NCBI RefSeq assembly: GCF_006345805.1
Contig: NW_021833012.1
Coordinates: 27,500-91,499, forward strand
Reading direction: 5' to 3'
DNA length: 64,000 nt
Origin: Octopus sinensis
Taxonomy: Eukaryota
Part shown: positions 1,129 to 63,391 of the stretch, in pieces
How positions within the stretch are numbered: position 1 is the stretch's first letter
Layout of the letters: every line of letters starts with the position of its first letter
Translations under genes and position numbers: made by a program
The notes under the pieces: model-generated
Seen by the model: only the letters and a program-made list of their open reading frames with translations
What the model was told of the DNA's origin: nothing
Databases searched by the model: none

Positions 1129-1543
1129 TTCTTTAAGAGAGAAATTTCTTGAAATAAGTGTTTTATCTTCTTACGTCCAATAATGTTGAACCAAGAGTTA
1201 TAGCGTTGTCTGACTCTGAAGTATTTACGAGAGGCCATTTAGCTCTGGAAGCCTTCTTCAACTGAATAACCAAGTTTCTTTCCTTGAACAGCTTAACCTG
1301 TTAGAAATTACTTATCACATGACCATCAGCCTGAGTCATGTGATGTGGTAAGCAGGTAAATTGTGTGAAGCAGACAACACTGCCATATGAGTGAGATATA
1401 CATCATCATCGTTTAACGTCCGTTTTCCGTGCTAGCACGGGTTGGACAGTTCGACCGGGGTCTGGGAAGCCAGGGGCTGCACCAGGCTCCAGTCTGATCT
1501 GGTGAAAGAAAAATTACAAGAAAGGTTTTAAAATGTACCATAT

Positions 1544-1574
<31 letters not shown>

Positions 1575-2469: not shown

Positions 2470-2606
2470 GAACCACATCATTCAACGCATCCCTTCTTGG
2501 TCCACAACAGAAAGCAGCCCCTATGACACCCAGAACTAATGTGGCATCCGGAGAAAATGCTGGCATCAAAATACAACTAATGATTGGTTCAATTTCTAAT
2601 GCATCT
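2470..2606 (+). CDS. PARP14: Exon A1: linker and first strand of macrodomain 1
   Basis: ttttcAG acceptor, GTGAGT donor, phase 1 to 0; encodes [45 protein letters not shown]; 137 nt, the same length as its paralog 24281-24417. Confidence 0.85.
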
Positions 2607-5600
2607 GTGAGTAAATAGATTCACTTAACATATTTATATTTAATTGTTATTTCATTTGCAAATGAGGAATCATTTCCAGTTAATTAAAACATTTTCTCAA
2701 TCAAACTCAAACATTTTATTTCCTTCACATCTGATATCTTGAGTATATCTTTTGCTAACTTTAACAACCGCAGACTTACTACAGCCATTCTGTAGAGCCT
2801 TACTTAACAACAATATCAACTGCAACAATGTATCTCTCTTCTCCACGGAATGTTCCTTAGCTGTTTACCATTAATTACTTTTGTAGGTTGATGTCATCGT
2901 TAACAGCACCAATAAAAACCTCCTGCTTAATAATGGTTCTATCTCCAATTTATTCTCAATGCTGCTGGTCCCCAGATACAAAGCGAATGTAGCCAGAAAT
3001 ATCCTCAAGGTATTTCTACTTCTGAAGTAGCCATAACTAAAGGATATAACCTCAAATGTAAGAATGTTTTTCATCTGGCATTACCGCCCTGGGGTGTAAA
3101 CTCCTCACATTCAGTAAGTATTATTCATATGTATTTGATTTATTGAAACAGTTAATGTTTGAAGAGAACCTTATGCATGTTGTGTGAGAATCATAAAGCA
3201 AATGTCAGCATCCTGTTTAATATTTGTTCTTCCAAGTTATCATTGGAAGGAAGCAGAAGATATCGATGAACAGGACACTTTTATATATAAATAGAAGGAA
3301 AAAAGCCTCATGGCCTAACAACAGTTATGTGACTGATAAATAAGACTATATTCAAACATATTTCTGTGTTTTACTGTCTGTATTGGTGAGTTTTTCTCTG
3401 TCATGGCACGAGCACTAGAGAGGTAGTCATGTCCTCAACAACACCAAAGACTCCTCTTGGGTCTGCATTGTCTCTCTTCATTCACCTATCATTTTACACG
3501 GTGGATTGGGTCTGTTTTATTGTAGCAGCATCATGAGTGAGGTTGCCTTGTCCCTTGCAGGACTAAAGAGTGATAGGAATGACAGTTGTGTTTAGCAGTG
3601 GCAGGAGTGAGAGGAGTTGTGAGAGGAGGATATATTTATTACAACTTAATGGTTTCTTCCTGTAATAAGAAAATAATTTAATAAAATGTTCATTATCAAT
3701 TACTAAACAATTATTTTTTTTAGACTCTGGCAAACTTGACTCAAATAATAACCATTTGTCTGGGGAAAGCTGAGAGAAGAGGAGCAAAAAGCCTTGCATT
3801 TCCTATATTAGGGGCTGGAAAATTGAGGTACCCCATTGAAAACCTACCCAGAACTATGTATGAAGCAGTGAAAAACTACTCAAAGCAAAATTCAAGCCAG
3901 ATCAAAGTTGTAAACTTTGTGGTTTATCCTCAAGACACAGAAATAGTAAAGGTTGGTTGATGTATTTGTTGTTTGTTGTTTTATGTTGATATTCTTGGAA
4001 TTCACCAAAACAAAGAAAATATTCTGCAATAAACAAAGGAAATCGAAATGAAAATAAAACTTAGAATCATGCTCGTTATTTATCACCTGTTTTCCATGCT
4101 GGCATGGGTTGGACAGTTTGACAGGAACTGGCTAGGCAAAGAGCCAAACCTGGTTCCATTCTTTGTTTTGGTATGGATTCTGCAGTTGAGATACCCTTCC
4201 TAACATCAACCAATTTACAGAGTGTACTGGGTGCTTTTTACGTGGCACCAGCACCGACAGAATTACCAATTATCTTGCAAGACAAGAACCCCTCAACTGG
4301 ACGGGAGTGGGGGGAATGGTACTGGTCGGCTGTGGCTTTGCGCCAGTTGAAAGACTTAGGGTATACTGGGGACAGAGAGAGGTATCTTGCTGTAGAGTAG
4401 TTACATGAATGCCCCAGTTGGAAGGAAAAGGAAAGAAGGGGTCAGATAGTAAGATAAAAAGAGTGATAGTGAGAGATATGATGGTGGAGATGTGATGGGA
4501 CATGCCCTCGAGGGAGATGGGGTGGTGAGGATAGGTAAGGGGATATAGAGGCTTCAGCTGGGTGAGGGGGGCAGGATGAGATGATTGTAACAAATGATGC
4601 AGTGAAATATAGAAATGGCTTGTGGGGTTGCAGTAGATATATGTGGGTATTGAGGGCAATAGTAGATAAGCAAGGAGTTGATGATGGAGAGCAGCAGAGG
4701 GAGAAGAGAGAAGGTGCAGAAAGGAGGTGGGGTTAGTATGTGCCTATTCTGCTCTCAGGTAATAGAGGAAATGGTGGATGTTAGGAAATGAAATGTGTGT
4801 GTATGGAATGGGAGAGAAGGTTGACATGGCAGCGCCCCTCATGGACAAACATTATCGTTATTTGGATATCAATTCTGTTCTGGTGGGCATGTCTTCTTAA
4901 GTACAGCCATGTACCATATATCTCATCCCTTTGTCATCTCCTTCATAAGGCTCACTGTTTTGAGATTGGCCTTCAATTCTTCATCCCATGTCTTCCTGGG
5001 GTCTCCCCCTTCCATAGCTTCCAACAACATCAAATTCCAACTTGATATTTTTCGAATTAACCCAAAACATATTCTGTAATTAATGAAGGAAATGATTATG
5101 AAGATAAAATATGGAATCAGTTTTGTAAATTTATTTATTGGTGTCTTAGAATTCTTCAGTTGGAATGTTGGAATCTTTGATGTGTCTCATGGCCCTGTCT
5201 TCCATACTTATAGGTTAGCTTGGTTTTCTTCAACTCTTCCATTCCATGATTTAATTCTTTGTAACTTGATATGGATTCAGTGTAGCTATGCTGTGCCTTA
5301 ACTTGCTAGTAATGGCAACCAAGTGTCCCTTGCTCTCATTTAAATTGGATGAGTTTTAAGGGTGTTCAACAGGATACTTTCTGCTATTTGTTTCAGCCCT
5401 TGGCATTCTGAGTTCAAATCCTACTAATGCTGTATTAACCTTTTATCGCTTCACAATTGATAAAAATCTCCCAATCTTGATGGCTGGATTGGTGGAACTG
5501 GAAGAATGACATTTCTTCTGTGGTATTTGTTTCAGTACTTGGCATTCTGAGTTCAAATCCTGCCATGGCGTTGCCGGAGTGTTAACTTAAACCATCCTTT

Positions 5601-5853
5601 GGTTTCACACCAACCCTCGGCACCTTGGCTATGTTTACTGGAATTCCCTTTGTCACAAGCATTTCAGCGACGTGTCTGGTTTGAGGAAATTTAAGATTTC
5701 AGCAAAGAAGGAAGGGGAAATGTTTTAACTTAGTCTGAATCTAACAAAAGACTTGCTTGCTGTTTGAATTGGTCAGTGACTGAGTGAATTCAGCTGAAGA
5801 TTTTTATGATGTCAACAAGTAATGTTCACAAGTATTGAAGAGAGTGATAGAGG

Positions 5854-5895
<42 letters not shown>

Positions 5896-8800
5896 AGGAA
5901 ATACATGTGCTTTTAACAATAAGTTCAGCATGGGTATCAGTCTGGGTGTTTTAAAGAACTGATTTCCTTATGACTTTATTATTATTGAGTGAGAGAGCAG
6001 CGCAAGCCATCAAAGTGACACTGGAATAAAATATACGAAGCCCAATATACCCATCATGACAACCCGTCTGATAAGGGTACACCAGGCACATGCATCACAA
6101 CCATATGTGCATGGCATGGTGATCTCATATCAAGATAAACAGCGCATGACCTTGCAGGTCAAGTAGCCCATCCTGCTCAAAAGGTCCCTGAATAACGATT
6201 GTTTAAGGATATTGAATGAAATACCCATGTTTCCAGAGGTGAATTATCCAAACCCCAAATAATTCCTCTCAACACATGGCTATGATGCTCCCTCACTACT
6301 TCTGCTCAAACAACTGTGGTACTGAATTGTGGTATTGAGCAGAATATTTGCTGCAGCCCATCTTTCATACCAAGACAAAACAATGTACATGATAATACTT
6401 CCAATCAGTTAAGGACAGAAGCTATGACTGTCACTGCCTGGTCCTGCATCAGGGCATTTATTATTATCATTATTATTATTATTATTATTATGAAAGCTTC
6501 TCAGATGGTTCTTAATTACCAGTTATTCTTTACTTGAAAACAGTCAACAACAAATCACCAAAGGTTTTCCAAGTAGTGCCTTCTCCTATGACTCAAAGAA
6601 ACAATACTCTCCTTAAAATGCAAGCTGTACCCAACAATGCTGACTTCTGAATTACCTCGAGCCTGACAGCAGCTCCAATATTCTTAATATGTTTTACAAA
6701 GCCCTTGGAAACTGCTCCTAATGCTCCAGTTACCACTGGTGTCACCATTATTTTCCCCATGTCCCATAACTTTTCTATCTCGTCCCAGACTGATACCATG
6801 CTGAACTTATTGTTAAAAGCACATGTATTTTCTCTCTCTCTCTCTCTCTCTGACCCTCTGCCTTTTTACCCTTGCTCTCTCTCTTCTGTTTCCTTATCTT
6901 TCACCCTCAAATTGCCTGGTATTGCAACATCTACTATCTTTGCTTCTTTTTCATCTTTATGGATGATCATGATATCTGGTTGTCTCGCCTCTATGACTTG
7001 GTTGCACTGTATGTTAAAATCCCAGAGTATTTTGTAATGATCATTTTCCATTTCTCCCTGTGGCTTGTGTTCATACCTATTTCCTTTACTACCCACAAGG
7101 GGCCAAACACAAGGACAGACAAACGAATTAAGTCGATTACACTGACCCCAGTGCGTAACTGGTACTTATTTAATCGACCCCGAAAGGATGAAAGGCAAAG
7201 TCGACCTCAGCGGAATATGAACTCAGAACATAGTGGCAGGCGAAATACCGCTAAGCATTTCGTCTGGCATGCTAACGTTTCTGCCAGATTGCCACCTTAA
7301 TACCATTGTTCTACTCTTTCAAGGTTTGCTTTACTACAGCCAGTAGACGTATCTGGCTACATTGTCATATCTCCTTTTATATTCATGTTGTGCAAGCTTA
7401 CAGCACTCACCAACAATATGGCATATACTTTCTCTCTTCTCAGAGCACATCCTACACTGTGGCAAGTCAGTGCTTTTATCAATGTGATATTTAGAGGAGT
7501 TTGTTCTGAGAGCTTGTTCTTGAGCGTTGCACACTAATGCCTCCAGTAGGCCCTTTTAAGTCTCCTTTCTGCAGCCATTGCCAGGTTCTATTCCAATTAA
7601 TCTCATCTTTATTCTTCAAGAACTGACTGTGCATGTTCTTGTCCTAATAAATTTCCTTCATCTGATTTCTCTAGCCTTCCTTAAATCGTGTTGGATCTAC
7701 AGCTGCGTTCACTTTTAAGGTTCCCTGCATTTTCACTGCTTCAATCCTTTCTTCTTTATTCCCCTTGACATACCAAGCCAGGCTATTCTCCTCTTCCTTG
7801 ACACACCATTCACAACATACCAATCCCTGTCGTCCTTCCCTCCTCCTTTACATACAACCTTGACACATCACTCTTGTGGTTCCAATTTCTTGTTCATTGT
7901 CATTAATTTACATGTTCTCCGGTCTATCTCTTGTAATTCATGCTTCTATCAAGATACTATTCCTGCCCCATATCTCATCAAAGCAACAGCCCATGTGTTA
8001 ATTGCTCTAATCTTATTGCAGCCATTTAGCTTCAATTGGAGCACAAGCCAAATTTCCTTCAAATACTCTTTCCTTAACTTTTCTTTGATCTCGTGTTTAT
8101 TCATCTTATCTCTTTCAATGATACCCAGGTACCTATATCCTTCCTCTCTGAATTCCCTTATAGTTTCATCACTTTCCAGCTTGATCCCATGGCTTTTACT
8201 GATTTCTCCCCCTTTTGAGAATCATTACACCACATTTCTTGATCTCAACTTCCATGCCAATATCTTTGCTAATCATCTGCACAGTTGCCATCAAGCTCTC
8301 AATTTCTTTCTCAGTCTTAGTGAATAGCTTTAGGTTACTAACCCCAAGATTCCGAGTTTGATTCCAAGCAGTGACCTGAACAACAACAACAACCTTAGGT
8401 ATGAGAACCCAGGTTCAAAATTTCCTCAAAATGCCTGATGAAAAGCTGGAGGGTATATCAGTCGAAACGTTGTTTTAACAACAAACAAGATGAGGACAAA
8501 AATCCATCAAATATAAATAATGTAAATAATGTACTTAATTCCTCATCTCTTAAATATAGAACTGTAATACCAGAACTTTGTTTCCTGTAGTATTTCTCTC
8601 AAGGGGATCATTCCCAGCATGAATATCAGTGGGAACACGCTGTCCCCTCTGGAAGATTCCTCTCTTGATTTTCACCTCTCCTAATACTTGATTCACCAGC
8701 TGTCAACTGCATTCTCCAACATTTCATGCTGTTCCATATAAGGTTGGTGGTGGTGGTCTGCTGCTGCTGCTTTTGTTTGTTTGTTTATTGAGTGAAGCAG

Positions 8801-11800
8801 TCTTCGTCCCAGAGCTCGCAAGATCGCGCCTCTATAGTAGGAGAAGGCGGAAACGTGGTCCTTTGCTATTTGTAAGACCCGCAGAAGAGAAAGCAGGTCA
8901 ACCCCCAATACCGAGAGCTTCAACGGATGGATGAATGCGCATCCAGGCTCAGTGGTTGCGTAGCAAGTCGGGGACAAGAAACAGGAAGAAAGAATGAGAG
9001 AAAGTTGGGGGTGAAAGAGTACAACAGGGGTCGCCACCACCCCCTGCCGGAGCCTCGTGGAACTTTAGGTGTTTTCACTCAATAAACACACACAACGCCC
9101 GGCCTAGGAATCAAAACCGCGATCCTCCGACCACGAGTCCACTACCCTAACCACTGGGCCATTGCACCTCCACTTGCTGCTGCTGCAGCATTGACATAAT
9201 TGGTGTATATTCAAGGAAGAAGAATTGAGTAAAATAATGTAAACCAATATTGAAATAGAAGAAACATCTGAGACATGAAAATGCATATTAGTTTTTGAAC
9301 AGCGTCTTTCACAGAAGGACATTTCCATCTTGTGATGTCTTTACAGAGGGACTTTAGTTCATGAAACTGGTGAAGAATATAATAAAACTAGCACTATGAC
9401 CCGGCGTTGCCGGGTTATAATGCTAGTGCATGCGTGCGCGCATACACACGAGTACTGTCCAAATCTCTGACCAATCACATACAGCTAGCTGGCATTCAAT
9501 TTGCGTATCAAGTTTCGGGCATTTTGATTGGGTTTTGGATAGAAAATTCACAAAAAAGTCACTTCTATTGATGTTTTAATGGCTTTGCGGGGTGACTGGG
9601 GAAATGTAAAGATGTGCACGACCACCCTTGGATGGTTTTGAATGACCATAGAAAGTGCGAGCCCTCTAACTGAAAAATTATGAATTTGTATAAAGGACAC
9701 ACACACAGACAGACATTTTGCCGTTTATATATAGAGAGATGACTGAGAGAGAAATAATCATTCAACTAGTTTTCTGAAATGATTGAATGAAGGAAACCAA
9801 GGTAGACTGTGAGTTGTCTAGGTTGATTGTGTATAGGGACGAGCTAGAGGTATAAACAGTGACAGACAAACAGAGAGAGAAGGGGAGAGAGAGAGAAATC
9901 TTTTTGGAAGAAGGAATGTAAATCTTTATTCTTTCTATTTCTCTCTCTCTCTCTCTCTCTTTATCTTTCTCTATATAACACACACATACATGTACACACA
10001 GATGCATTCTTATGTACGTATTATCATGATGATGATGATGATGGTGATGATTATGATGATCTCAGAAACAGATTTAAGAAAACACAACAAAAGTAGTAAA
10101 ACAGATCTGTAGTATCATCATCTTCACCCTCCCCCTCACCACCACAACCACCACCACCACCGCTGCCACCATAATAATAATTATCATGATCATCATAACA
10201 TCCACTTTTCTGTGCTTGAATGGGTTGGATGGAATTTGTTGAGGTGGATTTTCTATGGCTTGGTGCCTCTCCTGTCACCAACCCTCACCACCTTCCAAGG
10301 GAAGTAACTGTTTCCCCATTTTACAGAATATCACAAAATATTAGAAACAAAGGACACCACTTGCATAACAGGGACACTCGCTTACAACTATCACACAATG
10401 TCAAGGCAAGGAGAAATGCACTCACACACACACACACGTATGACAGGCTTCTTTCAGTTTCTGCTTACCAGACCTATTCACTAGGCTTTGTTTGGCCTAA
10501 GGCTGTAGCTGAAGAGACTTGTCCAAGGTGCCATTCATTGAGACTGAACCTTAATTAAGTCAATTAAAAACAATAGCAACAAATGCAGTATTAATATAAA
10601 AAGGTAAATTTTACATCCAACTAAATGTGGATGTTATGTTAGAACACCAAATACTGTGTTACTTACCTTGAGAAGAACTCTCATATTGACGCATGCTGCA
10701 TAAAAGCACTCATATTTATACTGCTAGCAGATGACAATCATCTATCTACTGGCACCAAAACTACCACATCACCTATTTTCGCTCTGCCTGGATCCATCAG
10801 TGACAGACATCCAAAAGCAACATAATAGCCGAATCTCACTGTCAGTCATATGTACACTTTTATGTCTTTTTGGACATTCATGTTGCAAATAGCCAGAAAG
10901 CTCATTAAAGGTAATTAATAGCCGGAAGGCTTATTAGAAATAATGAATAGCCACAAGGTTTATTAAACATAATTAATAGTTAGAAGGTTTATTATAGATA
11001 ATTAATAGTTAGAAGGTTTATTAGAAAAAATTAATAACCAGGAGGTTTATTAAAGATAATTATTAACCAGAAGGTTTATTAAAGATAATTATTAACCAGA
11101 AGGTTTATTAAAGATAATTATTAACCAGAAGGTTTATTAAAGGTAATTAAGAGCCACAAAGCTGATTTTTATTTTGATGTTGATGTACTTGACTCAGTAG
11201 GTCTCCTCAAGCACAGCATATCACCTTACGATCCAAGGTACTTTTAAGTGGGCTGGTTATGCGAAACTGGTGTGGGTTACAGCTGTGAACTCACTTTAAT
11301 TGCCGGGTCTTCTCAGTCACAGCATATCTCCAGAGGTCTCGGTCTTTCGCCATTGCCTCTGTGAGGCCCAATGTTCAAAGGTCATGCTTCACCACCTCAT
11401 CCCATGGCTTCCTGGGTCTCCCTCTACCCAAGATTTCTTCCACTGTTTGAGAGTGGCACTCCTTCACACAGCTCTCCTCATCCATCCGTAGTACATGACC
11501 TTACCAATGCAAACGTCTTTCTTGCTTGCCACATCCAATGCTTCTTATGCCCAACATTTCTCTCGGGGTGCTTACACTCTGTCGTGTGTGCACACTGACA
11601 TTACACATCCAGCAGATCATGCTAGCTTCATTTCTTTCAAGCCTACACATGTCCTCTGCAGTCACGGCCTATGTTTTACTGCCGTGAAGCATGGCAGTTT
11701 GCTCACATGCATCCTACAATCTATCTTTTACTCTGAGCAAGAGGCCCTTTCTCACCTATAGGAGTAGAAGCTTTCTGAACTTTGCCCAGGCAATTCTTAT

Positions 11801-17800: not shown

Positions 17801-20800
17801 TTTGAAAATGAATGTATTTTTTCAGACATATTTTTTAATTGTTTTATTTTACTATGTTTTGAATGGTGATTTCGAGGTATATTTCAAACCTTATTTATTA
17901 TGAATTTTAATTCAATAATATTGATTTTAAATTACCGCTTTGGGCAGAAACGAGTTAACCTGTTTTTTTCATAAATCATATTACTTTTACAAAAAATCAT
18001 GTTATTTTATTTGGTTATCTTATTTTCCAAATTTAGAATGAATGATCAAAACATGATTGTTTACTTCTGTTGATTTTATTACTTCAAAACTTAGTAATGA
18101 CAAAAAAGAGAGACAAAATAATGAATTATCATCATCAGAGCTCGACATGGTGGGGTTATAATATAAAGGTATAAAAAAAAACAACGTAAAAACAAAGTGA
18201 ATACTTCTATTCATAAAATGTGCCTTCCAACCCTTCAACTGTCTCCAGGTGACTAAATCATACTCGGTCTTCAATGCCTTACTCAAGCGAAAGGTGGCAG
18301 AAATCGTCACTGCCAGAGGTATAAAGTGAGTGAATATACTCGTATTTGTCAAAAAAGAGTTTATAATAGACAAAGGAACTCGTTTGCTGTCGATTTTGGC
18401 GAGTCTATCTTTTGACGAGTTAACTTGCCAGAGATAGAAAAAAACGATTTCGGTCAAAACGCATATATTCGTTTCTGCCGGGTAAGGGGTTAAAGCCCTT
18501 TTCGGAGCTACTTTATTTGAATTCTTACTATTGGGTAATTAATTTCATGTTATTATATAACTGACTTCACAATTTGGGTATTCATAACTTATTAGGAATT
18601 CTTAAAAACAAGATCCTGTGTAAATACACAAAAACCGTTTTAAGGGCCACATACTTTGTATTGTTGTTACTGGATTAGTGAAACAATTATGAGAATGAAA
18701 CCAAGGAATAAGCCCTGCTTTCCTGGGAATTACTGGGTACATCAGATAGTAATTAATTGCCAGAAGGTCTATTAAAAATAATAACGATAGAAGCAGTATT
18801 AATACCAAAATATAATATTTATGCCTTTCCACTGTAACAAAAAAATGAAGGAAATTTCTGTCCACTGTAGAATTGTTTGAGAACCTTTTTCTCTTTGAAT
18901 CTTTTCTCTTTTCTTTGTTATGAAGGACCACGGTCTGAATTGTCAGGTTTCCTCTCATTCTTCCTTACAATGTAAAAATAATTACCTTGTACTCCTGTTT
19001 GTTCCTGAAATAGCTTTGGACAAACAGGATGTAACAAAAACGCCTCAAATTCAACATTCTTGATAGACATTTTGACTGCAAACACAAGGTTCAACGGTTC
19101 TAACCATGATGGTAACTGGATAGAAAAAAAAACAGTAGAACTTCAGCTACATGAAGACACCATTACCACATGTTTAACTTCACTAACACCATGTTGGTGG
19201 CCATGTAAAGCATGGGAGGTTTTTCTGCTCTATTCACTGTATTACCATATTGACACAGGTCTCATGTCTCCCAAAAGGCAGGAAGGCCATGGATAGAATA
19301 TCTTTGATCTGAGTGACAAAGTAATTTTCCTCATTTCCTTATTACAGAGTAGAAATAAATCATTAAATATTTCAAATATTTTGTTTTTATTAAATTAAAT
19401 CTCTTCTCTTTGCAAAAATGGGAAAATAAAAATATAAATTGATTCTTTTTTGTTTTAACAGGAATTTGATGAATATCTCCGAAACAGAGGTAAAACATTT
19501 GTTTGTTAATATTGAATATTACGGTGTCTTGTCATGTCATTCTATGTTAAACATTACTGATAATTACTATTTTGGTTTTATTTCTGCAAGGAATTATGTT
19601 GATAGCAAGTTACTACCTGCAGCCTCAGGTAGCCACAAGTTTTTAGCAGTCTTTCAAGTGCTTACAACCCTCCTGATAATCCTTGCTGTACCTAAAAGAC
19701 AAACTTTCTGTAGAAGCTCTTCCGGGTATTCTATTTCAATATCCTTCAGCCATTTGTCTATATTTTGGCTTCCTGTTCCCAACACACCAATTATTATAGG
19801 CACCACCTTTACTGTTTGCATGCTCCAAATTCTTCCTATTTCAAATTTTAAGGGATTGTATTTACTTTGTTTTTCTTCTTCTTTACGATCCTGGAATCAA
19901 ACAGACATGATGGGTCGATAAGTAAGCAGCTTCTCTTTTCCTTATCTATGACTGTAATATCTAGTCTATTGTTTTCTAACTTTTTCTCCATTTGAATAGG
20001 AAAGTCCCATAAAATCTTACATTTCTCCAACTCCAATTCTCTTTTGACTCAATGATTGTGCTTTGTGTTTCCAGCTTCAAATCCCCATTTCTGGCACAGT
20101 TTCCAGTGTAAAACTTTTACAACCTGGTCGTGCCTCCGTTTCTTATATTCTTCCTGTGCCAACTTGGGGCATTCTTCCACGATGTGTGCCATTGACTCAT
20201 TCTAAGTTCCACAGGCTCTACATTTTTCTGACACATTCTCTCCATATATATTTTTACTCAAGTTGTTTGTTTTTATCGCTTGATCTTGGACTGTTACAAT
20301 TAGGCTCTCTGTTTCTTTTTTTAATTGGCCCCTTTTTAACCAAGCCCAGGATTTTGTTCCACAATATGTCTTTAGTGACTCTCCAGAATTGGCCATGCAG
20401 ACGTTCCTCTTCAATCTGTCTGACATGATATCTTTGCATTTCATCCTTGTCCTTCTATCCTATTACATGCTTGATCCTCTTTTTTTTTATTCATTTCACA
20501 GAAAGTTCTTTCAGAAATAAGACTAAACTTTGTTTCTTGCACAGAAGATTGCTTGCTTCCAGTTTTGCACTCCCAAGCAACAGCATTCTGGGAACTACAG
20601 TACCATTTGGATTAGGATTTGCTAATAGGTTCAGATATCTATAATACAAGACATTAAGAGGGTTAAAGTATGTAAACTGAATAAAAATATTAGATTTAGA
20701 ATTGAACCAAGCCTCATAAAATCTAACCAAAAAATATAAACTTGATATTGATTCTAATTGGTTGTAATTCTTATTAAAAGACTATCTTGAACATTATAAT

Positions 20801-23800
20801 TTCTAATTGAAGAGAAGAGCTTTGGACTTTGTGATGAAGAAATTATTCTAAAATACCATCTTGCAATAAACTAAAATAACGTCTTTTGAGAGGGGAGTTA
20901 ACTCTTCAATGTCTTATGAGAGGGGAGTTAACTCATCAATGTAGTCTTCCATGACCATCTCATGTGTGATGATACAACATAAGTTACATCCAATTATTAC
21001 TTTAGGAAAAAGAACCATAAATGTAATCTGATTGTAAATATTAAATTAATTAATAGTTATTATCATACTTAATGAGCTGATTCATTACCTCATTAATTGA
21101 AAGTTTATAGCTAGGCTCCTACTGAGTTTTGAACCATCACACTCAGGTTCTTCAGCATGGAACCATATTGTCAGCAAAGGAAAACCAGTTATGGAAAATA
21201 AATCATGCCACTATGAAAGGCGCTAACACCTCTGTGAACATGGCTTGGCCAATCAGATCAGCTGATGTACAACCAAGGGCAATGGAATTTTCCCACCAAA
21301 TAGTCTGGTCAAACGTTTTTTGGAAAACCCTGCTGGGCATTATAAAAATTCTTATTTTGCATTTCTAGACAGAATGAGCTCTGATACTTCACAGATGTTC
21401 TCACTTTTCTTTTTCTGCTTAGAACAACCTACGGTGCTTCTCAAAGCTGTGTCAGTCAGTTTTGTGAGAAGACATTTTCATTGTTTCTATTAATTTTTTT
21501 CTCAGTAATTATGAACTGTCTTTGTATTACTATTCAGCATATTATACAGTGAAAACTTGTACTTATTTCCATTCAGTATCACTTGACTATTACTTTAGCA
21601 AGCAGAAGAATATGTGGAAATATGTGGGTATGACAAAAGGTCCTTTCAGAACCATATTTAACAATCCTAAAAATTTCCATTAATGTCCAGGAGAGACATA
21701 ATGCCACAACCCTGGCTAGACACATATGGTTATTGAAGAAAAATGCCATGGATTATAACATCAAGTAGAGAGTGATAGGGAGGTGCAACCGTTACTTCAA
21801 TAGTAGCAGACGGGGAAGGTTAAACCTTGCTTAGAAAAGAACAATATTCAAGAACTCTCTTCATTCAGACACTTAACTAAAGCCTAAACTGCAAGGGTGA
21901 GTTTTACTTCCCTGGGCATGGATACATTGTAACTCCAACGTCTGGCAGCTGACCTGGCAGACACCCATAAAATTATTAACCATATTACAAACAATAACTC
22001 TGAGCACCTTTTCAAACTTCATCTGTCTAACACCCGTGGACATGTTTACAAAGTCAGAAAACAGCACAATTCCCATGACTTTCGGAAACATTTTTTCACG
22101 CTAAGAGTTGCTGAAGCATGGAACAAACTGCCGGTATCAGTTGTTAGTTGTCGGAGCACTGTATCCTTCAAAACTTCCATGCTTCCTGAGATTCGCCAAT
22201 ACTACACCTGATTTTCTCCCCTCCATACACACGCAAGCATGTATCTGATTCATACACTGTTCGCTTCCCAGACATTTGTACATTACTGCATATACTTTAT
22301 ATGCACTTTTGACAAGTTGTGGTGCACCTGAGCACTGTATACAATAATTTCATTATTATTATTATTATATGCCTGCATGAAAAATAGTATGTGATCAGTT
22401 ATCTACAAACTCTACCATAACATTACGATTTCCACCAGCAGTCTTTCCAACACCACAACCTAAGAGTCCAATACTGACTACACCGAACCATATGCACATA
22501 AACACATAGATATGCATCCGCATGAGTTTAAAGGTTTGGGTGCCTTCCCATGTCCTCTTTCAAAGTCCCTGCTTCCTGCACCAACTCCATACTGCCCACA
22601 CTCAAACTCCACTTTACTGGCAGTTATTTCTCACTCAGGGATTTGGGGCCAGGGACATAACCTTTGATGGAGTCCCTTCACTAGCTGTCTCCTACAGCAA
22701 CCACAACCAGATGTGTTACTTAAGATATTGTAAACTTTATGATTAACGTAACTTCTCTGTTGACAAATGTACAAGTGCCTGGTATTTCTCTTATGGAGTC
22801 TTAGACAATTTATATGCCTTGCTCATCATTTAATGTCCATCTTCCATTTTGGCTTGGGTTAAGCAGTTTGACAGGATCTGGTGAGATGCATTAGGCATGA
22901 TTTCCATGGCTGGCTGCCCTTCTTAATACCAAGCACTTCACAGTGTGGACCGGAAGCTGCTTTTTCCATGACCCCAGTGCTAGTAAGGTCACCAAGTAAC
23001 TTGTAATAGAAAGTGAAAAATGGAAAGAGCCCTGTAAAAGTGGGTGGGAGTGAATTTGGGAGACGGGTAGGTGGCTTTATATCCGGGGTAGGAGAGGTTT
23101 GATAGAGGGTCAAGTAGGGGTGTCTTGATATGGGGGAAATTCACGACTTGCTTATATTTTTTACAAAAGTGAATGAAAGTAGCTGGAAGGGAGAAAGATG
23201 GTGGTCATAGGGTGCAAGTGCATACTCTCAGTTTGCAAGGATGTGTGTATGGGGAGAGAATATAGAATGTGGATGAGGAAGGTAAGAAAGAGAGGGTAAT
23301 TTCATAAGAATATGGGATGAGAGGCGTGGCAGATGGTTAGTGATGGGGCTAGAGGTGGATGTAGTGAGTGAGGAACAATGGTTTGGGGTGGAGTTGATGG
23401 CAAATATCTGTATGGAGTGGGGCAAGTGAGAGTTAGATGAGGTTTGGGTAGGAGGGAGTGACAAGTAGCAACGTAGGAGTAGCAGAGGAGAGCAGCAGAA
23501 TCATAAATTCATAGACAAGGAAGTGCAGAGATGATGCACAGGATGTGACAGTGGAAGGGATGGGTTGATGATGATGATCAACTGGGACAGAGATGGGAGT
23601 TAGAGATACATGAGGATGGCTATAGTGAGTGGGGAGACAAAATTGGAGGGAGTATTGATAACGGATGTGAGAGGGCGTTGGGAATAAATGCATATAGGAG
23701 AAGTGTTAAACATCAAGAATGGCAAACTAAGATGTAGCTAAGAGTGGGAAGGGAAAGATTAGGGAAGGGGCAAAAAGGGATGATCGATGGAAGGTTGTAC

Positions 23801-25797
23801 GAACGGAGATGATGATGATGATGAAAGAGAGGCAACTGGTATTAATGAAAAGGGGTGAGAAGTGTTGTGCAGATTCTGCTCTCAAATGCTTACAGCAACA
23901 AAGTAGGGCCATAGTTAGAAGTGTAATGGAGGGATGGGTGTTAGGAAAATGAGATGTGGTGAAGGGTATGGTTGACATGGGCAAATGTCAGTGTAGGGCC
24001 CAACATGGACAGGAATAAGCACAATGCATTTAGGACCTCACTTTTGCTATGATGGATGTGTCTTTATATGTCATTTTGTTCAACTTGCATCAGTAGGTGT
24101 GTGGCCAGGTGGAAAACTGCACCAGACTTCTGTACATGCCAAAACAGACATAGAGGTCTGGTGCCATCTTCTACCTGGCAAGTTCATGTCAAATGATCCA
24201 ACCCATGCCAGCATGGAAGGTAGATGTTGAACGATGACGATGGTCATAATGATGACACACTGATATTTGTTTATTTCCAGAAACTAAATTATCAAGCCCA
24301 TCCTTTCCTGGTCCACAACTGAAAACAGTCCCTATCATACCCAGACCTTATATGACATCCGGAGAAAATGCTGGCATTAAAATAAACTTAATGATTGGTT
24401 CAATTTCTAATGCATCTGTGAGTAAATAGATTCACGTAACATATTTATATTTAATTGTTATTTCATTTCCAAATGAGGAATCATTACAGTTAATTAAAAC
24501 ATTTTCTCAATCTAACTCAAACATTTCATTTCCTTCACATCTGATATCTTGAGTATATCTTTTGCTAACTTTAACAACCTCAAACTTGCTACAGCCATTC
24601 TGTAGAGCCTTACTTAACAACAATATCAACTGCAACATTATATCTCTCTTCTCTCCATGGAATGTTCCTTAGTTGTTTACCATTAATTACTTTTGTAGGT
24701 TGATGTCATCGTTAACAGCACCAATAAACACCTCCAGCTTAATGATGGTTCTATCTCCAAATTTATTCTCAATGCTGCTGGTCCACAGATACAAGCTGAA
24801 TGTAACCGGAAATATCCTCAAGGTATTTCTACATTTGAAATAGCCATCACTGAAGGATATAACCTCAACTGTGAGAATGTAATTCATCTGGCATTACCTC
24901 CCTGGGATGAAAATTCATCTGATTCAGTAAGTATCAATCATATTATATTGATTTATTGAAAGAGTTGTTGTACAACCCTAGGTTATCATTGATCCAGCAT
25001 CCCTGTGGCATGAACGGAATTGTCCATAAAACTATGCACAATCCACAGATGTGTTTTTCCAGTCATACAACACCTCCGTCTGCTTCAGGACAGTAGCATG
25101 TACTTTGATGTCCAGTGATGTACAGTTTGGGCTACAGTGTGACAGTCTGGTGTTGTGGTGTTCTGTACAGTTTCCAAAGCATGGATTCTGGTTGTTTGAA
25201 ATTGATGTAGACTCTATTGTAGATATTCCCTGAACATTTCGACTCAACCATAGTCTCTTGTGTGCAGTGTAGAGTCTTTTGTGCCTGTGGCGCCCTGCCT
25301 TGTGGGCGGTTTTGTTGCTTCTTACAGTATGTTCTCACCCAGGATTCCCTCTTGTAAATAATAATTAATCTCTCCGCTTCCCTATTATTGTTTTTGTTAA
25401 TTACAACCACCAAATCTTGGAACATTTCTCTTTCCATTCACGGCATCCATATCATCACTCAGACCTGACTTCCTGCTATCACATGATCTGTGCTGATCCT
25501 TCTGTTAAATGATGTGTTAATCCAATGACCACATGATCTGTTAATCCAATAATCACTAGAAGTTGTTTAATGTTATTTGAATCTGTAAAACATTTCTGTT
25601 TGAAACAACAAATTCCATGTGCAATGTGTTGATCAAAGAATATATTCATCATTTTACATTTGATGGATATTTGTCCTCATCTTGTTTGTTGTTAACACAA
25701 CGTTTCGGCTGATATACCTTCCAGCCTTCATCAGGTGTCTTGGGGAAATTTTGAACCTGCGTTCTTATTCCTAAGGTATTTTTCGATGTTAATATTA

Positions 25798-25838
<41 letters not shown>

Positions 25839-28800
25839 GTTCAGGTCACTGCTTGGAATCAAACTCGGAATCTTAGGATTAGTAGTCCACGGGCATATGG
25901 CATAGTGGTTAAGAGTGCAGGCTATTAACACCAAAATTCTCAGTTCGATTCCAAGCAGTGACCTGAACAACAACAACAACGATGACAACACCAACAACAA
26001 CAACAATAATAATTATAATAGTAATAATAACAACAACATCGAAAAATACTTTAGGAATGAGAACCCAGGTTTGAAATTTCCCCAAGAAACCTAATGAAAG
26101 CTGGAGGGTATATCAGCCGAAACGTTGTTAACAACAAACAAAATGAGGACAAATATCTGTCAAATGTTAATAATGTACATAATTCCTCCTCTCTTAAATA
26201 TAGAACTGAAAGAATATTTTCATTACAACTTAATGATTTCTTCCTGTAATAAGAAAATAATTTAATAAAATGTGAATTATCAATTACTAAACAATTATTT
26301 TTTCAGATATTGCGAAACTTGACTAGCATGGTAGACACTTGTCTAGGAACTGCTTCATGTCTTAGTGCAAAAAGCCTTGCATTTCCTATATTAGGAGCTG
26401 GAGTATTGAAATATCCCATTGAAAAACTACCTGGAACTATGTATGAAGCAGTCAAAGAGTCACCTCGAAAATACGATATCAAAGATGTTTACTTTGTTGT
26501 TTTCCCTAAAGACACAGAAATAGTAAAGGTTGGTTGACGTATTTGTTGTGCATTGTATCATGTTCCTCCTCCTCCTCATCATCATCATCATCACCATCAT
26601 CATCATCATTATCACCATCACCACCACCACCACCACCATCGTCATCATCATTTACTGGGGAGCTGCACCAGATTCCAATCTGATTTGGCATGGTTTCTAT
26701 GGCTGGATTCCCTTCCTAACACCAACCACTCCAAGTGTGTAGTAGTGCTTTTTACGTGCCATTGGCATGGGTGCTAGCTACACAATACTGGCATCAACCA
26801 CATCTATGAGCCCACTTGGTTTGACAGGTCTTCTTAAGCATGCTATATTACCAAAGCTCTCAGTCACTTGTCACTGTCTCTGTGAGGCCTAACTATGATT
26901 TCACTTGGCTTGATGAGGCATTTCAAACACAGCATATCGCCAAAGGTCTTGGTTACCTCTGTGAGGCTCAATGTTCTATGGTCATACTTCACCACCTCAT
27001 CCCATGTCTTCCTGGGTCTGTCTCTTTCACAGGTTCCCTCCACTATTAGAGTGTGTGGCACTTCTTCACACAGCTGTCCTTGTCCATGTGTATCCCATGA
27101 CCATACCAGCACAGTCGTATCTCTTGCACACCACATCTGATGCTTCTTATGGTTAAGTTTTTTTCTCAAGATGTTTACACTCTGCCATGTATGCACACTG
27201 ACATTGCACATCTAGCAAAGCATACTGGCTTCATTTCTCTCAAGCCTACACATGTCCTTGGCTGTTATAGCCCATGTAGCATGGCTGTTCACACACAGGC
27301 TTCATAAATCTGCCTTTCACTGAGAGAGGCCCTTTGTTGCTTGCAGGGGTAAGGGCTCTCTGAACTTAGCCCAGCCTATTCGTATTCTCACGGCTATGCT
27401 CTCAGAGCTTCCACTCCCACTACCGACCTGGTCACCTAAGTAATGGATGTTATCAGCTACTTCTAGTTTACCCCGCTGGAATTTAACTCTACCTGTGATT
27501 CTGCCAGACACAAAAAACTGATTTTCCTGTTAAACTTCCTCTGATATTGATGCACCTCTTATGTGCCCCACAACGTGCATTGGGTACATTTTATGGAGTT
27601 TTTACCTACACCGTTTCTATAGATTGAGCAGAACCTGAAGGGGTTTGTGATTTGTCTGCTCTTCTACATGCTAAGACTTGGGTTCTTGCTAAAATCCTCT
27701 AAGGCCTTTGATTCAAGACTTTGCTCCCACACTTAAAATTTCTTCTCTAGTTCAGGTAGTGATTCAGCTATATGAAGAATGTCATCGGTATAGAGAAACT
27801 CCCAGGGGCAGCCCATTTTAAATTCCTCTGTTATTGCCTGGAGGTCTATGATGAACAAGAGGGAGCTGAGGACTGATCATTAGTGAACTCCTACTTTTAC
27901 CCTGAATTCTTGGCTATACTTGTTTCTAACCTTCACCTTACCTATAGCATCCATGTACATGTCTTGTACAGCACTCACCAACCACTCATCTATCTTTAGC
28001 TTCTGCATTGACCACCAGATAAGGGAGTGGGGGACCCTGTCAAAGGCTTTCTCCATGTCAACAAAAGCCAGATACAGGGGTTTATCTTTGGCTTTCTATT
28101 TCTCCTAAATTGCCTAACTATGAATATAGCATCAGTTGTGCTCTTGCCTGACACAAATCCAAACTGTATCTCATCAGATTGTGTCGTATAGCCAGCTGGA
28201 GACAATATCTCCTGGGACTAAATTACAGTAACATTAGTCCTAAACCAGGACTGACTACGAAATCCATACTTGTTGCAAAGTGTCCAATGGACAAGCCTGG
28301 CTATATTGTCATGGTGTCTCATATATTTCTTCTGGGCTAGTGGTGTACATTGGCTAGTAATATGCCATATGGTTTCACCGTTTTGTCCACAGATTCTGCA
28401 CTTATCACTTTTTGCTGTGTTGTCTATTCTGTATTTTATGTAGTTTGTTCTTAGTGCTTGCTCTTGGGCAGCACAGATTAGTGTCTCTGTTTTTGGTTTT
28501 AAATCACTTTTAGTCATCCACAGCCATCATTTTTCTCTGTCTGTCTTATCTTCAACATCCCTATGAAATTGACCATGCATTTTACTTTTTAACCCACCTA
28601 TTTTCAGTTTCATTCATTTTCAATTTTTTGTATAGTGCTTTATCTTTGCAATCTTTCATCCTACACAAGCCTGACCTTCTTACTTCTAATAATAGCAGTT
28701 CCATAGCATTGTTTACATACCATGCTATGTTGTTTTCTTCTGCTCTAATGCTGTGCTCGCATCCAATAAGTCCTCTTCCCCCTCTTTTTCTTGCTACATA

Positions 28801-60889: not shown

Positions 60890-60923
<34 letters not shown>

Positions 60924-63360: not shown

Positions 63361-63391
<31 letters not shown>

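What the first reader, a model, noticed from the sequence alone, without database searches (positions are those of the whole stretch)
2470..26528. Duplicated macrodomain exons are more diverged than their flanking introns
Manual counts: intron A-B (2607-2886 vs 24418-24698) has about 14 differences in 280 nt (~95% identity), and the ~85 nt before exon C is also above 90% identical. Exon B has 25 substitutions in 228 nt (15 codons nonsynonymous, 8 synonymous). Exon A has 23 in 137 nt, with 17 of 18 changed linker codons nonsynonymous. Exon C is only 47/76 identical in amino acids. This reverses the usual exon/intron conservation pattern. Established: mammalian macro-PARPs (PARP9/14/15) evolve under positive selection. 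Inference: diversifying selection on the two readers, intron-biased gene conversion between cassettes, or both; the elevated synonymous count in exon B favours some conversion.
Basis: partly seen in the sequence, partly recalled or inferred. Interest (0 to 1): 0.75.

Follow-up and report, generated by a model that had tools for sequence, protein, structure and literature searches.

The report
Octopus macro-PARP cassettes: introns homogenised, exons diverged
Two tandem ADP-ribose-reader (macrodomain) cassettes of an octopus PARP14-like gene really are more different in their exons than in their introns. This holds across the whole paralog family and is best explained by gene conversion keeping the introns alike while the coding parts stay diverse.

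Summary
Cassette 1 vs cassette 2:
- Exon A: 23/137 differences.
- Intron A-B: 12 substitutions and 2 indels in 279 nt (95.7% identical).
- Exon B: 25/227.
- Exon C: 54/222.
- Exons vs alignable non-coding: Fisher p=6e-7.

The pattern is family-wide. It holds in almost all 28 pairs of 8 cassettes from O. sinensis and O. bimaculoides, and in 4 O. vulgaris cassettes. Partly, it holds in Argonauta.

It is not simple positive selection:
- Synonymous divergence is also 3-6x the intron's (4-fold sites 20.6% vs 4.3%).
- dN/dS is 0.71 for the pair and about 0.85 family-wide.
- All three codon positions are equally variable.
- The similar zone is a ~400-bp block running into both exons (2578-2981 / 24389-24794).

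Recombination is detectable: PHI p=0.0005, mosaic tracts, and a 20-nt paralog-derived patch that differs between two haplotypes in the ADP-ribose loop.

Intron A-B clusters by species and exons do not. The intron is not conserved in Argonauta.

Verdict: concerted evolution of intron-centred blocks plus relaxed or diversifying exon evolution. This is a new member of a known kind (MHC-like, venom-gene-like).

The parts
2456..3990 (+). Cassette 1: the full homologous unit shared with the paralog family. It covers about 15 nt upstream of exon A to about 40 nt downstream of exon C.
   Evidence: Sliding-window identity among 4 paralogs drops from 0.84-0.98 to about 0.5 at both ends. Self-BLAST gives 2456-3153 and 3627-3987.
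2470..2606 (+). Exon A1: linker plus the first beta-strand of the macrodomain. It starts with 2 nt that complete a codon.
   Evidence: AG/GT boundaries and translation. The peptide is used in the O. sinensis RefSeq model P0018.
2607..2886 (+). Intron A-B of cassette 1. It is 95.7% identical to 24418-24698.
   Evidence: No Rfam match.
2887..3113 (+). Exon B1, 227 nt. A 1-nt deletion in the A-run at 2947-2948 shifts the frame. The remainder stays open in the +2 frame.
   Evidence: The same sequence is present in L006.
3114..3723 (+). Intron B-C of cassette 1 ('type I'). Windowed identity is 93-98% among cassette 1, L001, L003 and L005 (BLAST whole-intron identity 87-96%). Its middle is not homologous to intron B-C of cassette 2.
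3724..3951 (+). Exon C1, family-typical sequence (74-87% aa identity to complete paralog exon C sequences).
2578..2981 (+). Low-divergence block in cassette 1: the last 29 nt of exon A, all of intron A-B and the first 95 nt of exon B.
   Evidence: Maximum-likelihood two-breakpoint scan. Synonymous diversity is about 0-0.03 in codons 37-54 family-wide.
19463..19490 (+). 28-nt linker exon (EFDEYLRNR + 1 nt, phase 0 to 1). It would join C1 in frame to A2.
   Evidence: Motif scan and sequence with AG/GT sites. It is analogous to linkers in P0010, P0013 and P0016.
24267..26564 (+). Cassette 2: the full homologous unit.
24281..24417 (+). Exon A2. It carries 11 non-synonymous and 1 synonymous lineage-specific changes.
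24418..24698 (+). Intron A-B of cassette 2.
   Evidence: The RNA fold is not unusual (z=-0.62).
24699..24926 (+). Exon B2, intact 228 nt. It encodes beta-strand, the NSTN motif, the ADP-ribose loop 1 and helix alpha1.
24726..24745 (+). Loop-1 patch that differs between the window and the O. sinensis scaffold at 5 sites (NKHLQLND vs NEHLQLDS). The scaffold allele equals paralog L004 at all 5 sites, and at 3 of them L004 is the only match. This is a short conversion tract.
24389..24794 (+). Low-divergence block in cassette 2, the counterpart of 2578-2981.
24927..26306 (+). Intron B-C of cassette 2 ('type II'). It is 90% identical to L004 over 758 nt and contains a foldback insertion at 25653-26170.
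26307..26528 (+). Exon C2, the divergent exon. It has about 37 lineage-specific nucleotide changes and two in-frame codon deletions.
   Evidence: It is identical in peptide to P0018 residues 353-426.
30631..30684 (+). Linker exon after cassette 2 ([18 protein letters not shown]).
36029..36223 (+). Downstream coding exon of the same gene (acidic stretch plus [25 protein letters not shown]...).
   Evidence: 100% match to P0018 residues 444 onwards.
52900..53022 (+). Downstream coding exon matching the C-terminus of paralog P0006.
58444..64000 (+). Three exons of a PARP catalytic domain (58444-58581, 59347-59538, 63869-64000). The domain runs off the end of the window.
   Evidence: tblastn with P0019 and P0020. 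Pfam PF00644 E=2.8e-15.

Best explanation
The two cassettes are tandem PARP14-macro2-like domains of one macro-PARP gene. The gene order is RRMs, macro1, cassette 1, linker, cassette 2, and further on the PARP catalytic domain. The gene belongs to a large, recently expanded Octopus paralog family.

The duplicates are old. Their outer flanks and synonymous sites differ by roughly 15-27%.

Inter-paralog gene conversion repeatedly homogenises blocks anchored on the most conserved sequence: the splice-site-proximal exon ends, intron A-B and the ends of intron B-C. Those blocks therefore stay about 95% alike and cluster by species.

The remaining exon segments are not homogenised. These encode the linker, ADP-ribose loops 1 and 2, and exposed helix faces. 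They carry old, patchy variation that short conversion tracts shuffle among paralogs. Synonymous differences are preserved along with the amino-acid differences next to them.

Shown here: the exon>intron pattern, its family-wide extent, dS>>K_intron, the recombination signal, mosaic tracts, species-clustering of the intron, and no intron conservation across genera.

Inferred: exon diversity persists because homogenising conversions of those segments are selected against (diversifying selection on an immune-type reader) rather than merely by chance.
For: Pattern and extent:
- Exons vs non-coding, p=6e-7.
- Intron A-B identity exceeds both exon A and exon B identity in 26 of 28 pairs of 8 cassettes. 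Intron A-B identity is 0.89-0.98; exon identity is 0.75-0.96.
- The independent O. vulgaris assembly shows the same: intron 0.947-0.974, exons 0.785-0.939.

Not simple positive selection:
- Family mean K_intron is 0.056, dN 0.144, dS 0.172.
- 4-fold sites differ at 14/68 vs intron 12/279, p=5e-5.
- Variable fraction at codon positions 1/2/3 is 0.375/0.359/0.391, vs 0.15 for the intron.

Outer flanks of the same paralog pairs are 75-84% identical, about the same as dS, while their intron A-B is 94-96% identical.

The low-divergence zone is a block that crosses both splice sites. Synonymous diversity is about 0 at the adjoining exon ends.

Recombination:
- PHI p=0.0005; 51% of informative site pairs are incompatible.
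- Cassette1-L002a mosaic tract 2050-2650: 22/580 vs 130/969 elsewhere, p=9e-11.
- L002a-L002b tract, global p=0.027.
- A 20-nt L004-type patch in loop 1 distinguishes two haplotypes.

The pseudogene cassette L002a still has intron A-B 93-97% identical to the other O. sinensis/window cassettes (0.894 to O. bimaculoides L005).

Species structure:
- Intron A-B identity is 0.956-0.960 within sinensis/vulgaris and 0.917-0.925 to O. bimaculoides. Exons show no such structure.
- L005 has 10 private intron substitutions vs 1-5 in the others, but is ordinary in exons.

The intron is not alignable between Octopus and Argonauta, whereas exons are 72-79% identical.

Amino-acid variability is highest in the linker and the two ADP-ribose loops and lowest in the strands.
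Against: - No pair-specific conversion tract between cassette 1 and cassette 2 themselves.
- The species-clustering test rests on a single O. bimaculoides cassette.
- Singleton (lineage-private) changes are also about 2.5x denser in exons than in intron A-B. Pure 'old shuffled variation' does not predict this unless many donors are unsampled.
- dN/dS>1 was found only in windows (linker 1.4). It was not tested with site models, so selection against exon homogenisation is inferred, not shown.
- Rm=36 may be inflated by recurrent mutation.
- The sharp divergence step exactly at the exon C acceptor site, in Octopus and in Argonauta, would equally fit an exon-limited process.
Confidence: 0.6

Rival explanations
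1. The cassettes duplicated recently, so the introns act as a neutral clock at about 5%. Recurrent positive selection on the macrodomain readers then accelerated the exons.
For: - Exons are more diverged than introns.
- The linker has omega about 1.4, with windows up to 2-6.
- Lineage-specific changes in exon A2 are 11 non-synonymous to 1 synonymous.
- Variability peaks in the ADP-ribose loops.
- Mammalian macro-PARP macrodomains are under positive selection (PMC4038475).
Against: - Synonymous and 4-fold sites are elevated as much as non-synonymous ones (dS 0.269 vs K_intron 0.044; 4-fold 20.6%). Positive selection cannot do this.
- Omega for the fold is 0.71.
- The outer flanks and the middle of intron B-C are unalignable or only 75-84% identical, so the duplicates are old.
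- Exon lineages show no species structure.
Confidence: 0.08
2. The internal introns are under purifying selection because they carry a function, such as splicing control of near-identical tandem cassettes, an intronic RNA or an editing-complementary sequence. The exons, meanwhile, evolve almost neutrally.
For: - Intron A-B is uniformly 93-98% identical in all sinensis/vulgaris cassettes and 89-94% to O. bimaculoides.
- Both internal introns are more conserved than the outer flanks.
- Exon omega is about 0.85, with equal codon-position variability.
Against: - No Rfam family matches.
- The predicted fold is no better than shuffles (z=-0.62 and -0.06).
- The antisense ORF has no Pfam match.
- The intron is not alignable to Argonauta although the exons are.
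- The dead cassette L002a keeps the similar intron.
- Between the two haplotypes, intron A-B differs as densely (5/281) as the neighbouring sequence.
- Constraint would lower within-species and between-species distances alike. Instead, within-species distance is half the between-species distance for the intron only.
- The similar block extends into synonymous sites of both exons.
Confidence: 0.14
3. An exon-limited diversification process operates. One possibility is short conversion tracts from a wide pool of distant paralogs or processed copies that share homology only in exons. Another is ASSET-like segment switching or exon-targeted hypermutation. Either would add clustered synonymous and non-synonymous changes to exons, while the introns simply reflect a recent common origin.
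For: - Divergence steps up exactly at the exon C acceptor site in cassette 2 and in Argonauta, where exon C is 9/231 vs intron B-C 5/1190, p=6e-5.
- Multi-nucleotide codon changes occur in 22 of 194 codons between cassettes 1 and 2.
- A paralog-derived 20-nt patch lies inside exon B.
- Exon singletons are elevated.
- There is a precedent in snake three-finger toxin genes, where introns are conserved and exon segments switched (PMC2474615).
Against: - No donor for the unusual exon C2 was found. Only P0018, the same locus, has it among 5.8 billion proteins searched with a profile.
- The one demonstrated patch donor (L004) also shares intron homology.
- The outer flanks indicate old rather than recent duplicates.
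- The similar block includes exon ends.
Confidence: 0.13
4. The pattern is an artefact. Either assembly or polishing of a multi-copy family made the most similar parts (the introns) artificially uniform, or cassette 1 is a decaying pseudo-cassette and the comparison is meaningless.
For: - The family is multi-copy with 90-98% similar segments.
- B1 has a frameshift.
- L002a is a pseudogene.
- RefSeq model P0018 skips B1, C1 and A2.
Against: - The same pattern appears in three independent assemblies (O. sinensis, O. bimaculoides, O. vulgaris) and partly in Argonauta.
- The cassette 1 region is base-identical in the window and in scaffold VCDQ01000156.1.
- Neutral decay cannot make exons diverge faster than introns.
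- B1's private changes are mostly synonymous (6 synonymous, 5 non-synonymous; pN/pS 0.23), so it was constrained until recently.
- Intact cassettes show the pattern among themselves.
Confidence: 0.04

Closest known systems
Vertebrate macro-PARPs (PARP9/14/15), in particular human PARP14 macrodomain 2
   Same: - Pfam Macro domain (E about 1e-21).
- The best solved relative by sequence and by fold is PARP14 macro2 (3Q71: phmmer 1.9e-21, TM 0.89, rmsd 2.0 A).
- Tandem macrodomains lie upstream of a PARP catalytic domain on the same strand, and RRM_PARP14 domains lie upstream in the O. sinensis scaffold.
- Rapid evolution and gene birth and loss are documented for the vertebrate genes (PMC4038475).
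   Different: - Only about 30% identity.
- Both octopus cassettes are macro2-like duplicates rather than distinct macro2 and macro3.
- The family is expanded into many small macro, macro-macro and macro-PARP genes in Octopus.
- No WWE domain was detected by Pfam in the exon tested.
- In primates, positive selection was inferred from orthologs and sat away from the ADP-ribose site. Here the signal is between paralogs, with omega<1 overall and variability that includes the ADP-ribose loops.
MHC genes: concerted evolution of some segments alongside retained diversity in the binding-site exon
   Same: - Different parts of one gene have different histories.
- The homogenised parts cluster by species, while the diversified parts keep older lineages.
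- Recombination breakpoints fall in or near introns (PMC3434948). Compare.
   Different: - The octopus case involves paralogous cassettes of an intracellular ADP-ribose reader, not allelic lineages of a peptide receptor.
- dN/dS>1 at binding residues has not been shown here.
Accelerated evolution and 'ASSET' in snake venom three-finger toxin and PLA2 genes
   Same: - Introns of paralogs are nearly identical, while short exon segments differ sharply (PMC2474615).
- Here K_intron is about one third of dS, and the divergent exon patches are multi-nucleotide.
   Different: - These are not secreted toxins.
- Overall dN/dS is below 1.
- A recombination signal and paralog-derived patches are demonstrable here, whereas the ASSET mechanism was left open.

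Membership tests
Macrodomain (Pfam PF01661) | Match to the family HMM above the curated cut-off | tested here: met
   Cassette 2 scores 74.7 bits and frame-corrected cassette 1 scores 77.1 bits, against a cut-off of 22.
Macrodomain (Pfam PF01661) | Three-layer alpha/beta/alpha macro fold | tested here: met
   The AlphaFold2 model has mean pLDDT 89.1 and pTM 0.87. The top Foldseek hits are PARP14 macro2 entries 4D86 and 3Q71 (TM 0.89, rmsd 2.0 A).
Macrodomain (Pfam PF01661) | Asn of the NAAN-type motif on the floor of the ADP-ribose cleft, plus a pyrophosphate-binding G-x-G loop | tested here: met
   N51 of VNSTN is invariant. G151 and G153 of LGAG are nearly invariant (at least 90%). Motif roles are taken from PMC7729036.
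MacroD-type ADP-ribosyl hydrolases | Triple-glycine catalytic loop after the NAAN motif | tested here: not met
The loop reads KHLQLNDGS or KNLLLNNGS, with a single Gly.
Macrodomain (functional reader) | Binds ADP-ribose or mono-ADP-ribosylated protein | not testable with these tools
   Requires a binding assay.
Macro-PARP (PARP9/14/15-like) | Macrodomain(s) and a PARP catalytic domain in one gene | tested here: inconclusive
   Both lie on the + strand in the expected order (cassettes 2470-26528; catalytic exons 58444-64000). Paralogs P0019-P0022 are annotated macro+PARP proteins. However, RefSeq model P0018 for this locus ends before the catalytic exons, and no transcript data were available.
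Macro-PARP (PARP14-like) | N-terminal RRM repeats and a WWE domain | tested here: inconclusive
   RRM_PARP14_1 and RRM_PARP14_3 hits occur on the gene called just upstream in L006. No Pfam WWE hit was found for the 52900-53270 exon translation.
Multigene family under concerted evolution by gene conversion | Statistical signal of recombination among paralogs | tested here: met
   - PHI p=0.0005.
- Cassette1-L002a mosaic, p=9e-11.
- L002a-L002b tract, global p=0.027.
- L004-type patch in one haplotype.
Multigene family under concerted evolution by gene conversion | Paralogs within a species are more alike than copies between species, in the homogenised segment | tested here: met
   Intron A-B identity is 0.956-0.960 within sinensis/vulgaris and 0.917-0.925 to O. 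bimaculoides. L005 has 10 private substitutions vs 1-5 in the others. Only one O. bimaculoides cassette was available.
Diversifying (positive) selection on a binding surface | dN/dS significantly above 1 at a subset of codons | tested here: inconclusive
   Pairwise omega is 0.49-1.77 (mean about 0.85). It is 0.71 for the fold and 1.4 for the linker. Site models (codeml, FUBAR) were not available, and recombination would bias them.
Venom-type accelerated evolution / ASSET | Intron divergence well below synonymous divergence of the adjoining exons | tested here: met
   K_intron 0.056 vs dS 0.172 family-wide. For cassettes 1 and 2 the values are 0.044 vs 0.269.
Venom-type accelerated evolution / ASSET | dN/dS at or above 1 over the mature coding region | tested here: not met
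   0.71 for cassette 1 vs cassette 2. The family mean is about 0.85.

The most novel reading that the evidence does not exclude
The Octopus macro-PARP cluster may be a germline diversity-generating locus. In this reading, conserved introns and exon ends act as homology anchors. They let short, exon-confined conversion tracts (or ASSET-like segment switches) shuffle and renew the ADP-ribose-loop and surface-coding patches among dozens of cassettes. The result would be a combinatorial repertoire of ADP-ribose readers in an invertebrate that lacks adaptive immunity. The haplotype-specific L004-type loop-1 patch would be a snapshot of this process.
Probability: 0.15. Interest if true: 0.75.

Novelty: new member of a known kind. 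Interest (0 to 1): 0.45.

Why it matters
Macro-PARPs are interferon-linked antiviral factors in vertebrates, and their macrodomains are known arms-race targets. This work shows that octopuses have expanded a PARP14-macro2-like cassette into a multi-copy family. In that family, introns evolve in concert while coding patches, including the ADP-ribose-binding loops, stay diverse and are exchanged between copies.

This points to an invertebrate immune-type gene family evolving in the manner of MHC or venom genes. It offers a concrete system for two questions: how gene conversion can both homogenise and diversify, and what ADP-ribose readers do in cephalopod immunity.

There is also a practical warning. 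In this family neither introns nor synonymous sites are a simple neutral clock. Automated gene models (for example A1 joined to B2) and standard dN/dS tests will mislead unless recombination is modelled.

Tried and rejected
- **GENECONV-like longest-concordant-run test, cassette 1 vs cassette 2:** not significant (p_pair 0.07, global 0.93). A private, recent conversion between the two cassettes is not supported.
- **Known RNA in the introns:** Rfam gave nothing at gathering threshold over the whole window and nothing at E<=1 over 2400-4050.
- **Structured RNA or an editing duplex:** the intron A-B fold has z=-0.62 and exonA-intron-exonB has z=-0.06.
- **Antisense coding in intron A-B:** a 52-aa reverse-strand ORF has no Pfam match.
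- **CpG or composition bias:** exons and intron each have only 1-3 CpG, with GC of 0.30-0.39. Transition/transversion counts are 99:79 in exons and 30:32 in introns. This is not enough to explain a 3x difference.
- **Deep conservation of the intron:** blastn with word size 7 finds only exons B and C between Octopus and Argonauta.
- **Locus retrieval failures:** P0009 and P0004 (O. vulgaris) failed because the gene ranges exceed 100 kb. P0023, a second O. bimaculoides cassette, is not on record. The cross-species test therefore rests on one O. bimaculoides cassette.
- **Literature:** no paper on an octopus or cephalopod PARP14/macrodomain expansion was found. The phrase search 'more conserved than exons' plus gene conversion returned nothing.
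- **Not done:** the variable residues were not placed in 3-D relative to bound ADP-ribose. Mapping was by secondary structure and motif homology only.

Full report
**What is there**

The window is octopus DNA. It is collinear with Octopus sinensis scaffold VCDQ01000156.1 (L006) at 99.2-99.6% identity.

On the + strand it carries two three-exon cassettes:
- Cassette 1: A1 2470-2606, B1 2887-3113, C1 3724-3951.
- Cassette 2: A2 24281-24417, B2 24699-24926, C2 26307-26528.

Each cassette encodes a linker plus one macrodomain.
- Pfam PF01661 matches at E about 1e-21.
- The closest solved relative by sequence is human PARP14 macrodomain 2 (3Q71).
- An AlphaFold2 model (pLDDT 89, pTM 0.87) matches the same domain by fold (TM 0.89, rmsd 2.0 A).
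- The catalytic triple-glycine loop of hydrolase-type macrodomains is absent, as in reader-type macro2.

The cassettes belong to one macro-PARP gene.
- RRM_PARP14 domains and a macro1-like domain lie upstream in L006.
- A 28-nt linker exon at 19463-19490, in the right phases, would join C1 to A2.
- A second linker lies at 30631-30684. Further exons lie at 36029-36223 and 52900-53022. PARP catalytic exons lie at 58444-58581, 59347-59538 and 63869-64000.

B1 lacks one A at 2947-2948, so the frame breaks. The same deletion is in L006, whose cassette 1 region shows no substitution over 3.5 kb. RefSeq model P0018 accordingly joins A1 to B2. B1's private changes are mostly synonymous (6 synonymous, 5 non-synonymous), so any disablement is recent.

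**Check of the observation**

| Segment | Differences | Identity |
|---|---|---|
| Exon A | 23/137 | 83.2% |
| Intron A-B | 12 substitutions + 2 indels / 279 | 95.7% |
| Exon B | 25/227 | 89.0% |
| Last 96 nt of intron B-C | 7/96 | 92.7% |
| Exon C | 54/222 | 75.7% |

- Exons (102/586) differ more than alignable non-coding sequence (32/451), p=5.8e-7.
- The middle of intron B-C is not homologous between the cassettes.
- The homologous unit has sharp ends at about 2456 and 3990.
- A two-breakpoint scan shows that the similar zone is a block, 2578-2981 / 24389-24794, with 20/407 vs 52/294 differing columns. It fits better than the intron/exon split (2dLL 30.2 vs 13.6). Within it, exon and intron sites are equally similar.

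**The pattern is family-wide**

Protein searches found more than 20 Octopus 'PARP14-like' proteins with one or two such cassettes, some with a PARP catalytic domain.

I retrieved cassettes with their introns from:
- O. sinensis (L001-L004, L006);
- O. bimaculoides (L005);
- O. vulgaris (L008, L009);
- Argonauta hians (L007).

Results:
- Among 8 cassettes, intron A-B identity exceeds both exon A and exon B identity in 26 of 28 pairs. Intron A-B identity is 0.89-0.98 and exon identity is 0.75-0.96.
- Where alignable, the whole of intron B-C shows windowed identity of 93-98%.
- The four O. vulgaris cassettes, from an independent assembly, behave the same way: intron 0.947-0.974, exons 0.785-0.939.
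- In Argonauta the two cassettes are 97-99% identical overall. Exon C is an island of divergence (9/231 vs 5/1190 in intron B-C, p=6e-5), while exon B is identical.

**Selection or conversion**

Nei-Gojobori estimates for cassettes 1 and 2 give dN 0.191, dS 0.269 and omega 0.71, against K_intron 0.044. The family means are 0.144, 0.172 and 0.056.
- Four-fold sites differ at 14/68 against 12/279 in the intron (p=5e-5).
- The three codon positions and 4-fold sites are equally variable (0.36-0.39), against 0.15 for the intron.

Synonymous sites are therefore elevated as much as replacement sites. Positive selection after a recent duplication cannot produce this.

Outer flanks that are still alignable are 75-84% identical. 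These are cassette 1 with L002a and L005, and cassette 2 with L001 and L004. That divergence is about equal to dS. The anomaly is therefore unusually similar internal introns, not unusually fast exons.

Evidence for recombination or gene conversion:
- PHI p=0.0005, and 51% of informative site pairs are incompatible.
- A mosaic between cassette 1 and L002a: 22/580 differences in 2050-2650 vs 130/969 elsewhere, p=9e-11.
- A tract between the neighbouring L002a and L002b, global p=0.027.
- Between the window and L006, differences near cassette 2 are confined to 24186-25994. They include a 20-nt patch in loop-1 codons (24726-24745, NKHLQLND vs NEHLQLDS). There the L006 allele equals paralog L004 at all five sites.
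- No private tract links cassettes 1 and 2.

**Conversion or intron constraint**

Six observations argue against constraint:
- Intron A-B is not alignable between Octopus and Argonauta, although exons B and C are 72-79% identical.
- No Rfam family matches, the predicted RNA fold is not unusual, and the antisense ORF has no domain.
- The pseudogene cassette L002a (one stop, two frameshifts) keeps intron A-B 93-97% identical to the other O. sinensis/window cassettes, and 0.894 to O. bimaculoides L005.
- Haplotype differences are as dense in intron A-B (5/281) as nearby.
- Intron A-B is twice as similar within the sinensis/vulgaris complex (0.956-0.960) as to O. bimaculoides (0.917-0.925). L005 has 10 private intron changes vs 1-5 in the others. 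Exons show no species structure. Constraint would scale both distances equally. Concerted evolution predicts exactly this contrast.
- The similar block spills into synonymous sites of both exon ends.

The weak point is that only one O. bimaculoides cassette could be retrieved.

**Where the diversity sits**

Across 24 family cassettes, mean entropy by region is:

| Region | Mean entropy (bits) |
|---|---|
| Linker | 1.12 |
| ADP-ribose loop 1 (cassette residues 54-62) | 1.02 |
| ADP-ribose loop 2 (cassette residues 149-158) | 0.91 |
| Helices | 0.81 |
| Beta-strands | 0.54 |

- The loop assignments come from motif homology to the NAAN motif, catalytic loop and pyrophosphate loop (PMC7729036).
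- Variable helix positions follow an i, i+3/4, i+7 spacing (67, 70, 74, 78; 132, 135, 136, 139, 140).
- Omega is about 1.4 in the linker and 0.71 in the fold, with a few windows above 1.
- The extreme divergence of exon C2 is private to that lineage and equally synonymous and non-synonymous. No donor sequence was found.

**Conclusion**

The most likely account is as follows. The paralogous cassettes are old. Inter-paralog conversion keeps the blocks anchored on the most conserved sequence uniform, while the coding segments between them retain and exchange old patchy variation. Selection against homogenising those segments is plausible for an immune-type reader, but it is inferred rather than shown.

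The rivals, with the probability I assign to each:
- intron constraint, 0.14;
- an exon-limited diversification process, 0.13;
- pure positive selection, 0.08;
- artefact, 0.04.

Comparable behaviour is documented for MHC genes (PMC3434948) and for snake toxin genes (PMC2474615). Rapid evolution of macro-PARPs is known from vertebrates (PMC4038475). I found no report for cephalopods. I therefore class this as a new member of a known kind, of moderate interest.

Noticed in passing
window 2947-2948 (exon B1): A 1-nt deletion (AA where all other cassettes have AAA) shifts the frame of cassette 1. The rest of B1 and C1 stays open in the shifted register. The same deletion is in O. sinensis scaffold VCDQ01000156.1.
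   Followed up: partly
window 1-43153 vs L006 28580-72233: The window is collinear with an unplaced O. sinensis scaffold at 99.2-99.6% identity, but the differences are clustered. There are none in 1500-5000 apart from a 6-nt microsatellite indel, and none in 23300-24185 or 25995-27500. About 50 substitutions plus indels fall in 24186-25994. This looks like a haplotype-level mosaic around cassette 2.
   Followed up: partly
window 2470-2606 joined to 24699-26528 (RefSeq model P0018): The annotated O. sinensis protein joins exon A1 directly to B2 and C2. It skips B1, C1, the 28-nt linker and A2. It then reads through the donor site of the 36029-36223 exon into intron sequence before stopping.
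   Followed up: partly
window 19463-19490: An unannotated 28-nt linker exon (EFDEYLRNR + 1 nt) has good AG/GT sites. It would put cassette 1 and cassette 2 in one reading frame.
   Followed up: partly
window 25653-26170: A foldback-type insertion lies in intron B-C of cassette 2. Its inverted arms are 25697-25840 and 25985-26128 (85% complementary), with (TTA)n and (AAC)n runs. Related copies occur at 8379-8567.
   Followed up: no
window 62190-63190 and 765-967; L006 7962-8445: A tandem array with a 123-nt period (two 61-nt sub-units) has about 8 copies at 94% matches. A related 62-nt repeat occurs near the start of the window and in the scaffold upstream.
   Followed up: no
window 10888-11156 and 16647-17131: Two arrays of the same 29-nt tandem repeat (9 and 17 copies) lie in the large intron between the cassettes.
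   Followed up: no
window 46736-47371 and 48044-48666: A pair of inverted copies about 635 nt long, 95.8% identical and about 670 nt apart, each containing 143-156-nt internal tandem repeats.
   Followed up: no
window 42241-43080 (-), 57064-57522 (+), 13187-13684 (-): Retroelement remnants sit in the introns. One is an ORF with a zf-RVT domain (E=3e-6). Another is an ORF with a weak RVT_1 hit below the Pfam cut-off. The third ORF gave no hit.
   Followed up: partly
L002 4845-5555 (O. sinensis VCDQ01000043.1): This is a pseudogene cassette with one stop codon and two frameshifts, and no exon C was found. Its exon B is 96% identical to the intact cassette 9 kb downstream. Its upstream flank shares a 96%-identical tract with cassette 1 of the window.
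   Followed up: partly
L007 9397-14396 and 22593-25471 (Argonauta hians): Two tandem cassettes are 97-99% identical including their introns. Exon C is a local island of divergence: 9 changes, 6 of them amino-acid changing. A PARP catalytic gene model lies just downstream.
   Followed up: partly
window 26560-26650: A long CAT/CAC/CCT trinucleotide run begins 30 nt after exon C2, where homology to the other cassettes ends.
   Followed up: no
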